Positions 12,782 through 13,160 of a stretch of DNA of 64,000 bases are shown piece by piece (within the stretch, counting starts at the first letter, position 1; every line of letters starts with the position of its first letter). Source of the stretch: Saccostrea cucullata (taxonomy: Eukaryota); the NCBI RefSeq assembly GCF_032062105.1, contig NW_026927899.1:186001-250000 (forward strand). The letters run 5' to 3'. The notes under the pieces were generated by a model, which saw only the letters and a list, made by a program, of their open reading frames with translations, ran no database searches and was not told where the DNA came from. Both the position numbers and the translations under genes were made by a program.

Positions 12782-13160
12782 CATCATTTATGGTGAATAC
12801 AATTTCTTGGAAGTATTAACATGCCTTTTCAATTATGGCAGATATACAAATTTACAATGCATTTTTACGCTGTGTCAATTATAGCGGATGCATTTTTATT
12901 AGCATTTTTACGCTGTGTCAATTATGGCGGATGCAATTTTTTTTTATTAATGCATTTTGACGCTGTGTCAATTACAGCGGATGCAATTATTTAATTAAAT
13001 TAATGCATTTTTACGCTATGTCAATTATAGCGGATGCATTTTTTAACATTTCTACACCTTGTCAACTATGGTGTATCTAATTTTTATAATGCATTTTACA
13101 CCACGTCAATATGGGTGAATGCATTATCTGGCATTTTTATGTTATGTCTATAAATGACAA
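12782..13160 (+). other. Array of 7-9 predicted RNA hairpins with a conserved (G)UCAAU-type loop
   Basis: Units atgcatttttaCGCTGTG-tcaat-TATAGCGgatgcat with G-U pairs and compensatory changes between copies. Confidence 0.65.

What the first reader, a model, noticed from the sequence alone, without database searches (positions are those of the whole stretch)
12782..13160. Covarying RNA hairpin array inside the Ngaro element, between the hydrolase and gag
Seen in sequence: the tandem units vary in ways that preserve base pairing. Stems around a conserved TCAAT loop are CGCTGTG/TATAGCG (12868-12886), CGCTGTG/TATGGCG (12911-12929), CGCTGTG/TACAGCG (12961-12979) and CGCTATG/TATAGCG (13014-13032). 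Both arms then change together: TACACC/GGTGTA (13053-13075), CACC/GGTG (13099-13117), TGCC/GGCA (12822-12840) and TGTTAT/ATGACA (13140-13159). Flanking ATGCA(T) motifs extend several stems past a U-rich internal loop, and units are separated by variable A/T linkers. The non-canonical pairs are mostly G-U on the + strand, which points to RNA structure on the element's sense transcript. Inference: a multivalent cis-acting RNA element, such as a Gag zinc-finger binding/packaging signal, a splicing or translation control for downstream gag, or a small-RNA precursor. I know of no such array described for DIRS/Ngaro elements, but could not search.
Basis: partly seen in the sequence, partly recalled or inferred. 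Interest (0 to 1): 0.85.

Follow-up and report, generated by a model that had tools for sequence, protein, structure and literature searches.

The report
Hairpin array in oyster retrotransposon RNA
An intact jumping gene of rock oysters carries 8-10 copies of a small RNA hairpin whose stem keeps its pairing while its letters change and whose loop stays fixed. It probably tags the full-length RNA for a protein, and it is a first candidate RNA signal for a retrotransposon group in which my searches found none described.

Summary
Eight hairpin units (12810-13167, plus weaker ones out to about 13280) lie between the SGNH-hydrolase ORF and gag of an intact Ngaro-type element (A1-ORFs-B1-A2-B2). The unit is a 6-bp stem with a 7-nt GUCAAUU loop, sitting on a U-rich bulge and a short lower stem.

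The array recurs, 4-18 copies, in the same spacer of five sister families (50-80% protein identity). In three of the four closer ones the rest of the spacer no longer aligns. Stems covary beyond shuffled and tree-aware nulls, and G-U beats A-C changes 14:3, favouring the sense strand. Rfam has no match.

Nearest outgroups and most distant Ngaros lack it, but two distant families carry arrays with other loops in the same spacer. Conserved splice-site-like motifs place the array in a predicted intron, so it would mark unspliced RNA.

Best reading: a multivalent protein-binding signal on the full-length RNA, probably for the Gag CCCH+CCHC fingers (inferred, about 0.45). A host export, stability or splicing factor is the main rival. 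No transcript or binding data exist. A second, more deeply conserved hairpin family lies after the recombinase gene.

The parts
11443..11706 (+). A1 split direct repeat (matches A2 in two blocks, 11443-11538 and 11603-11706)
   Evidence: 100% and 98% to 18056-18151 and 18173-18276
11806..11883 (+). Predicted 78-nt leader intron: donor AG|GTGCGT at 11806, acceptor ATAG| at 11883. Inferred; no transcript seen
   Evidence: both motifs invariant in 6 loci amid variable DNA; length 78 or 93 in sister loci
11899..12507 (+). SGNH/GDSL hydrolase ORF, 202 aa, catalytic S, N, D, H motifs intact
   Evidence: PF00657 E 2.7e-7; best PDB hit 4c1b ORF1p esterase, E 1.4e-4
12501..12513 (+). Conserved AGATAAGT motif over the hydrolase stop; candidate second splice donor
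   Evidence: same motif in L001, L002, L005-L024
12776..12803 (+). Degenerate unit 0 (loop lost)
   Evidence: z -0.15
12810..12849 (+). Unit 1, stem UGCC/GGCA
   Evidence: (32.1 bits)
12856..12895 (+). Unit 2
   Evidence: 51.3 bits; z -4.1
12899..12938 (+). Unit 3
   Evidence: 51.5 bits
12949..12988 (+). Unit 4
   Evidence: 43.6 bits; z -4.0
13002..13041 (+). Unit 5
   Evidence: 53.8 bits; z -4.5
13043..13082 (+). Unit 6, stem UACACC/GGUGUA
   Evidence: (37.2 bits)
13087..13126 (+). Unit 7, stem CACC/GGUG, one loop base deleted
   Evidence: 37.6 bits; z -3.9
13128..13167 (+). Unit 8, divergent
   Evidence: 22.7 bits
13193..13224 (+). Type-B hairpin: similar bulge and lower stem, 8-bp upper stem 13201-13219 with UGU triloop; counterparts in L001
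   Evidence: (13.6 bits, weak)
13258..13279 (+). Probable degenerate last unit (loop GUUAUUU)
   Evidence: z -1.9; uncertain
13646..13661 (+). Predicted splice acceptor (pyrimidine tract + CAG) ending 8 nt before the gag ATG
   Evidence: such a site in 12 of 16 elements vs 15% background, p 1e-7 (the window's own site scored 7 of 12 pyrimidines, just under the cut-off of 8)
13670..14779 (+). Gag-like ORF, 369 aa, with CCCH finger followed by CCHC knuckle (about 14603-14704)
   Evidence: no capsid fold match
14424..16310 (+). RT/RNase H ORF, 628 aa; no room for a methyltransferase domain
   Evidence: RVT_1 at 199-373, RNase H-like at 483-601
16259..17215 (+). Tyrosine recombinase ORF, 318 aa
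   Evidence: PF00589 E 9e-7
17302..17580 (+). Second hairpin family, 3 copies (17302-17333, 17350-17383, 17547-17580): NNAG, 2-nt bulge, CAG-loop-CUG, CUNN
17707..18030 (+). B1 split direct repeat
   Evidence: 99% and 97% to B2
18056..18276 (+). A2 split direct repeat
18378..18702 (+). B2 split direct repeat (3' end of element)

Best explanation
The array is a selected, multivalent RNA stem-loop signal on the sense transcript of an intact Ngaro retrotransposon. Each unit presents a fixed GUCAAUU loop on a 6-bp stem whose sequence is free as long as it pairs, which is the usual signature of a protein-binding hairpin. Splice-site-like motifs suggest gag and the downstream ORFs are made from a spliced message that drops the hydrolase-gag spacer. 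The array would then exist only on the unspliced, full-length RNA (or the pre-mRNA). Most likely the element's own Gag zinc fingers (CCCH + CCHC) bind the loops cooperatively, select the unspliced RNA for the reverse-transcription particle, and perhaps hold it unspliced once Gag builds up. Copy number changes by unequal recombination (4-18 units), while selection keeps fold and loop. Shown computationally: array, conservation, covariation, strand bias, position. Inferred: splicing, RNA rather than + strand DNA, the binder, the function. About 0.85 that it is a functional RNA structure; about 0.45 for the Gag/genome-selection role.
For: Array in the same spacer of L001 (Saccostrea echinata), L002 (Ostrea edulis), L015/L016, L005/L006 and L097/L098. 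In L002, L016 and L098 only the array aligns within the spacer, apart from short stretches at its ends. Sequence-only alignment of 42 units: 88% of cells paired, 22 double-change cells, all 6 pairs with double changes, 0 of 500 shuffles. Tree-aware null: 222 vs 188 paired cells and 22 vs 7.5 double changes, 0 of 2000. Loop-closing pair U-A/A-U/C-G ranks 1 of 666 column pairs. In L006 the stems are wholly replaced while the loop is kept. G-U vs A-C 18:4 cells, 14:3 tree events, p 0.006. Two distant families (about 30% hydrolase identity) have covarying arrays with other loops in the same spacer. Acceptor before gag in 12 of 16 elements; invariant leader donor. Gag fingers invariant. CCHC boxes package RNA in retroelements (PMC6681497), and psi is bound by NC on unspliced RNA (PMC3856414).
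Against: No spliced contig was found among the fetched loci, and there are no expression or binding data. Only one pair is individually significant in my R-scape-like test, and only among the proposed pairs (E 0.009; E 0.99 over all pairs). The model finds no array in L003, L004, L025 or 71 distant loci, although L003 and L025 have very similar Gag fingers. Gag shows no capsid fold. A more deeply conserved 3' hairpin family is a better candidate for the core Gag/RT signal. DNA parameters also fold the + strand well (z -6.0).
Confidence: 0.45

Rival explanations
1. Same RNA hairpins, but bound by a host protein. They would act as an export element for intron-containing RNA (CTE/RTE/MTE-like), as a shield against nonsense-mediated decay placed just after the first stop codon of the full-length RNA (RSV RSE-like), as a splicing regulator, or as a localisation or decay element in a hydrolase 3' UTR.
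For: The array starts 100-300 nt after the hydrolase stop in the families where this can be measured. The full-length RNA would have a >5-kb 3' UTR, the situation the RSE solves (PMC5580461, PMC2925335). The loop is constant across families whose Gag differs by up to 50%. The type-B hairpin and the L046/L091 array carry UGU triloops that fit the Roquin CDE shape (PMC6294493).
Against: Different Ngaro lineages use different loops, which suits a lineage-specific partner. No Rfam match. The main loop fits neither the CDE triloop nor the ADE hexaloop.
Confidence: 0.33
2. A double-stranded DNA array of transcription-factor or insulator sites with AT-rich linkers, like the gypsy Su(Hw) insulator (own knowledge). 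The commonest arms resemble inverted YY1 cores (CCAT/ATGG).
For: 24 of 42 units have CCAT in the 5' arm and 24 have ATGG in the 3' arm. The array lies upstream of gag.
Against: None of the 8 window units keeps GCCAT. Changes that destroy the site keep the pairing. dsDNA cannot tell G-T from A-C, yet the bias is 14:3.
Confidence: 0.07
3. A neutral minisatellite born from a palindromic unit, whose arms are kept matched by hairpin-templated repair and gene conversion.
For: Copy number is labile, and blocks of units are duplicated in L001 and L015. Oyster genomes hold many tandem repeats.
Against: The unit persists across five families while linkers and, in most of them, the rest of the spacer diverge beyond alignment. 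In L006 the units are dispersed with unrelated stems and the same loop. Templated repair would not conserve a loop or favour G-U over A-C. Other arrays occur at the same place in distant families.
Confidence: 0.05
4. Hairpins act in single-stranded DNA intermediates (DIRS-type elements make ss cDNA, PMC7192593), for example in strand transfer or recombinase loading.
For: The + strand folds well with DNA parameters (z -6.0).
Against: First-strand cDNA is the minus strand (general knowledge), where the G-U pairs become A-C mismatches (z -2.0). The array is far from the A/B repeats that drive strand transfers.
Confidence: 0.05
5. Cluster of small-RNA precursors (miRNA- or mirtron-like) released from the intron.
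For: Tandem hairpins in a predicted intron.
Against: Units are about 35-40 nt with 11-15 bp, well short of Drosha/Dicer substrates (general knowledge). The loop is conserved and the arms vary, the reverse of miRNA conservation. No Rfam hit.
Confidence: 0.04

Closest known systems
Ngaro-like tyrosine-recombinase retrotransposons with an SGNH ORF (e.g. Xenopus DIRS-53_XT; PMC9210276, PMC8547959)
   Same: A1-ORFs-B1-A2-B2 repeats, overlapping gag, RT/RH and YR ORFs, no methyltransferase, extra SGNH hydrolase.
   Different: Here the hydrolase is a separate first ORF, 1.16 kb upstream of gag (in the Xenopus elements all ORFs are said to overlap). There are predicted splice sites and two multi-copy hairpin families, none mentioned in the papers found.
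Retroviral psi packaging signals (PMC3856414)
   Same: Hairpins upstream of gag on unspliced RNA, with zinc-knuckle Gag as candidate binder.
   Different: Psi has a few dissimilar hairpins and a dimerisation site. This is 4-18 near-identical units of variable number, in a non-LTR-type YR element with no detected capsid fold; binding untested.
Export and stability elements of unspliced retroviral RNA: CTE, RTE/MTE, RSV DR, RSE (PMC3856414, PMC4588558, PMC5580461)
   Same: Structured cis element that would matter only on intron-containing RNA; RSE-like position after the first stop codon.
   Different: No sequence or Rfam similarity; iterated short units instead of one large fold.
Roquin CDE/ADE hairpins (PMC6294493)
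   Same: Short, sequence-free stem with a fixed loop, often in tandem. The type-B hairpin and the L046/L091 units have UGU triloops.
   Different: The main loop is 7 nt, GUCAAUU: not a YRN triloop, not the U-rich hexaloop.
Kink-turn / SECIS cores (own knowledge of consensus)
   Same: Asymmetric internal loop with A next to the upper stem and a purine-A step opposite (A at both sites in 32 of 42 units).
   Different: Tandem G-A/G-A present in 1 of 42 units; helix too short for SECIS; no in-frame UGA.

Membership tests
Ngaro-like YR retrotransposon | Split direct repeats A1-[ORFs]-B1-A2-B2 | tested here: met
Ngaro-like YR retrotransposon | Gag-like, RT/RNase H and tyrosine recombinase ORFs, overlapping | tested here: met
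Ngaro-like YR retrotransposon | No methyltransferase domain (separates it from PAT-like) | tested here: met
   RT ORF ends 27 aa after RNase H; no MT family hit
Ngaro-like YR retrotransposon | Groups with reference Ngaro elements in an RT/RH tree | not tested
   no reference Ngaro sequences were available from a tool
Retroviral psi-type packaging signal | Present only on unspliced RNA | tested here: inconclusive
   splice-site motifs conserved but no spliced transcript seen
Retroviral psi-type packaging signal | Bound by the Gag NC zinc knuckle and needed for encapsidation | not testable with these tools
   knuckle present; binding needs an experiment
Retroviral psi-type packaging signal | Gag with capsid fold | tested here: inconclusive
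   model pLDDT 60.6; no PDB match with E<0.001
Any Rfam family | Covariance-model match | tested here: not met
   0 hits at E<=5 and E<=1
Roquin CDE | 6-8-bp stem capped by a YRN triloop | tested here: not met
   main units have a 7-nt loop; the shape is met only by the type-B hairpin and the L046/L091 units
Kink-turn | Tandem G-A / A-G pairs after a 3-nt bulge | tested here: not met
   1 of 42 units
miRNA precursor cluster | Stem of about three helical turns with a conserved arm | tested here: not met
   11-15 bp per unit; arms vary, loop conserved
RSE / CTE-type element | Protects or exports intron-containing RNA in a reporter | not testable with these tools
   needs cell assays

The most novel reading that the evidence does not exclude
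SGNH-first Ngaro elements use expandable, lineage-specific hairpin arrays as a self-recognition code. Each lineage has its own loop (GUCAAUU in oysters, UUGUUUGUG and C-G-closed UGU in two distant families), read by its own Gag fingers. This couples a splicing switch to selection of the full-length RNA. A separate, deeply conserved bulged hairpin after the YR gene serves RT recognition or priming. That would supply the missing cis-acting RNA signals for an order of retrotransposons.
Probability: 0.3. Interest if true: 0.82.

Novelty: new variant of a known kind. Interest (0 to 1): 0.63.

Why it matters
How tyrosine-recombinase retrotransposons pick their own RNA for reverse transcription is largely open: the one experimental study I found concerns DIRS-1 and its ICR (PMC7192593), and ten literature searches found no cis-acting RNA structure described for Ngaro elements. 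This locus gives a defined 19-nt motif with natural compensatory variants, natural with/without lineages, swapped loop types and a candidate 34-residue binding module, so the question becomes directly testable. If Gag binds the loop specifically, it is also a new small hairpin-protein pair of the MS2/PP7 type.

Tried and rejected
Database and literature searches that found nothing:
- Rfam on the element and on five sister or distant loci: no hits. No tRNA.
- Exact 16-mer scan of viral contigs: 33 scattered single hits, no arrays, taken as chance. The Gag profile found nothing in viral contigs and three short contaminant-like contigs in a MAG.
- Gag fold search and PDB/Pfam scans: no capsid or other family.
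- Ten literature searches found no description of such an array; subscription journals are not covered.

Readings considered and rejected:
- Loop-loop pairing with a complementary site: AATTGAC is at chance frequency in the window.
- K-turn, SECIS, IRE, CDE/ADE, miRNA and YY1 readings: rejected as above.
- Sigma-70 promoter and terminator hits are irrelevant to an animal genome.
- A post-hoc excess of single YCAR-loop hairpins in distant spacers (18 of 25 vs 11 +/- 2) is only a lead.

Data that could not be obtained or were deliberately left alone:
- Two contig look-ups returned no DNA and one protein was not on record, so families around the clade boundary are thinly sampled.
- The N gap at 10484-10652 lies outside the element and was left alone.

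Full report
Setting. The finding lies inside an intact retrotransposon at 11443-18702. Split direct repeats are ordered A1 (11443-11706), B1 (17707-18030), A2 (18056-18276), B2 (18378-18702), 97-100% identical. Four open ORFs lie on the + strand: an SGNH hydrolase, a Gag-like protein, RT/RNase H and a tyrosine recombinase. There is no methyltransferase, so by structure it is Ngaro-like (PMC9210276, PMC8547959). RT and YR are 91% and 93% identical to an element in Saccostrea echinata, so the host is probably a Saccostrea rock oyster (inference). Near-identical repeats and intact ORFs suggest recent activity.

The observation. The + strand folds far better than shuffles (z -4.72) and the - strand does not (z -1.47). 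The unit is a lower GCA/UGC stem, a U-rich bulge ending in A, a 6-bp upper stem and a 7-nt loop, most often GUCAAUU. The array runs a little further than stated, with a UGU-triloop hairpin at 13201-13219 and a degenerate unit near 13258-13279.

Sister elements. I fetched DNA around hydrolase and Gag homologues. The array is in the same spacer in S. echinata L001 (about 15 units), Ostrea edulis L002 (about 9), L015/L016 (14-18), L097/L098 (about 11; Gag 50% identical) and L005/L006 (4-6 dispersed units; hydrolase 57%). In L002, L016 and L098 only the array aligns within the spacer, apart from short stretches at its ends; L001, the closest relative, aligns throughout. In L006 the stems are replaced outright (AAGUCGC/GUGGCUU, AGUCAA/UUGACU) around an unchanged loop.

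Covariation. I chose 42 units by sequence similarity and aligned them without structure. The 6-bp stem is 88% paired, with 22 double-change cells and double changes at all six pairs; 0 of 500 shuffles reach these values, and slid controls give 20-61% pairing. Because units are related, I added a tree-aware null: 222 paired cells against 188 +/- 9, and 22 double changes against 7.5 +/- 3, in 0 of 2000 runs. A pair-by-pair R-scape-like test is weaker. Only the loop-closing pair is significant (E 0.009 among proposed pairs; rank 1 of 666 but E 0.99 over all pairs). The tree is built from 40-nt rows and power is low. G-U outnumbers A-C 18:4 in cells and 14:3 in tree events (p 0.006). That places the structure on the + strand. 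It does not by itself separate RNA from + strand DNA, which also folds, but first-strand cDNA would be the minus strand.

Distribution. The model finds no array in the nearest outgroups L003 (Pinctada), L004 and L025 (Crassostrea virginica), or in 71 loci from marine metagenomes (the hosts of those contigs were not identified). The carriers form one weakly supported side of the hydrolase tree (88/77). A motif-free search found two distant families with their own arrays in the same spacer: L028/L034 (7 and 4-5 units, loop UUGUUUGUG, 97% paired, three pairs with double changes) and L046/L091 (6-7 hairpins, mostly C-G-closed UGU loops). The other spacers tested, about two dozen, showed no clear array. 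Arrays are therefore recurrent but optional, and probably arose or were retuned more than once.

Splicing context (inferred). An invariant AG|GTGCGT and an invariant ATAG| flank a 78-nt stretch before the hydrolase ATG in all array families checked. AGATAAGT is conserved over the hydrolase stop. A pyrimidine tract plus YAG lies within 30 nt of the gag ATG in 12 of 16 elements, against 15% background (p 1e-7). Gag sits behind a complete ORF and 1.16 kb of AT-rich spacer, so a spliced gag message is the simplest way to translate it. Either donor would remove the array. No spliced contig was among those fetched, so this is unproven.

Candidate binders. Gag carries an invariant C-x8-C-x4-C-x3-H finger followed by a C-x2-C-x4-H-x4-C knuckle. 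Its model is middling (pLDDT 60.6) and matches no capsid structure. The hydrolase has an SGNH fold with intact catalytic motifs. Its best solved sequence relative is the LINE ORF1p esterase 4c1b, which binds lipids and not oligo-A RNA (PMC3905857), so it is the less likely partner.

Mechanism. The best-supported reading is a multivalent protein-binding signal that marks the unspliced RNA. I put about 0.85 on a functional RNA structure, 0.45 on Gag-mediated selection of the full-length RNA (with possible splicing feedback) and 0.33 on a host factor (export, NMD shielding, splicing or decay). The array's position 100-300 nt after the first stop codon of a transcript with a >5-kb 3' UTR makes the RSE-like version a serious rival. 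A DNA site array, a neutral minisatellite, ssDNA hairpins and small-RNA precursors are each at 0.07 or less, for the reasons listed under rivals.

A second hairpin family. Between the YR stop and B1 the window has three copies of a bulged hairpin, NNAG-GC-CAG-loop-CUG-CUNN, whose outer stem varies as ACAG/CUGU, GUAG/CUAC and ACAG/UUGU. It occurs 5 times in L001, 4 in L002, 5 in L003, 3 in L025, once in L041/L092 and weakly in L004, L029, L035 and L037, always on + and within about 750 nt after YR. Its pair counts are partly circular, since rows were picked for pairing; the position is not circular. Being older and on every transcript, it is the better candidate for a core RT or Gag signal, which makes the spacer array look like an accessory discriminator of unspliced RNA.

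Novelty and verdict. There is no Rfam match, and ten searches of the open literature found no such array in DIRS/Ngaro elements. It works like known retroelement cis-acting RNA signals (psi, CTE, RSE) but is not shown to be a member of any. I rate it a new variant of a known kind: real, conserved, under selection for pairing, function inferred. Interest 0.63.

Noticed in passing
window 17302-17580; L001 12752-13138; L002 9649-10005; L003 10120-10808; L025 10522-10762; L041 5355-5387: Second multi-copy bulged hairpin family just after the YR gene, conserved deeper than the spacer array; candidate RT or Gag recognition or priming signal.
   Followed up: partly
L028 1376-1866, L034 2235-2630: Distant Ngaro family with its own covarying hairpin array (loop UUGUUUGUG) in the hydrolase-gag spacer.
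   Followed up: partly
L046 1298-1502, L091 7814-8020: Another distant family with arrays of C-G-closed UGU-triloop hairpins, matching the Roquin CDE shape.
   Followed up: partly
window 11865-11900: Inverted repeat (TGTTTACAT / ATGTAAACA) ending at the hydrolase ATG, around a conserved CTAWAAATAG. Could be a start-codon hairpin, FOX/MEF2-like sites or a splice acceptor; folding z only -0.57.
   Followed up: partly
window 12501-12509; also downstream of the stop in L003 and L079: AGATAAGT conserved at or near the hydrolase stop: GT donor after TAA, U2-type AT-AC donor, or GATA site.
   Followed up: no
L003 4270-5860: The Pinctada spacer seems interrupted by an insertion and an inverted duplication, and holds three GCAUC-A(C/A)AUG-GRUGC hairpins; possibly a third array type.
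   Followed up: no
L025 6433-6590: Four loop-like 7-mers (GTCAATT, GTGAATT, GTCAAAT) without good stems in the C. virginica spacer; possible relic of the array.
   Followed up: no
L029, L030, L039, L040, L042, L048 spacers: Single GUG(C/U)-stem hairpins with CCAA or UCAGU loops; possible single-copy ancestor of the oyster unit (post-hoc excess 18 of 25 vs 11).
   Followed up: partly
window 11539-11602 vs 18152-18172, and 18277-18377: A1 and A2 differ by an internal block, and a 100-nt unique stretch separates A2 from the scored B2.
   Followed up: no
window 6052-6627, 7717-10033, 33564-34012, 43017-44033, 45351-45760: Unrelated satellite-like tandem arrays (periods 71, 34, 165, 147, 22) typical of oyster genomes.
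   Followed up: no
L142-L144: Ngaro gag fragments on short contigs in a Desulfobulbaceae MAG; likely animal-host contamination.
   Followed up: no
window 10484-10652: Run of N upstream of the element; left as is.
   Followed up: no
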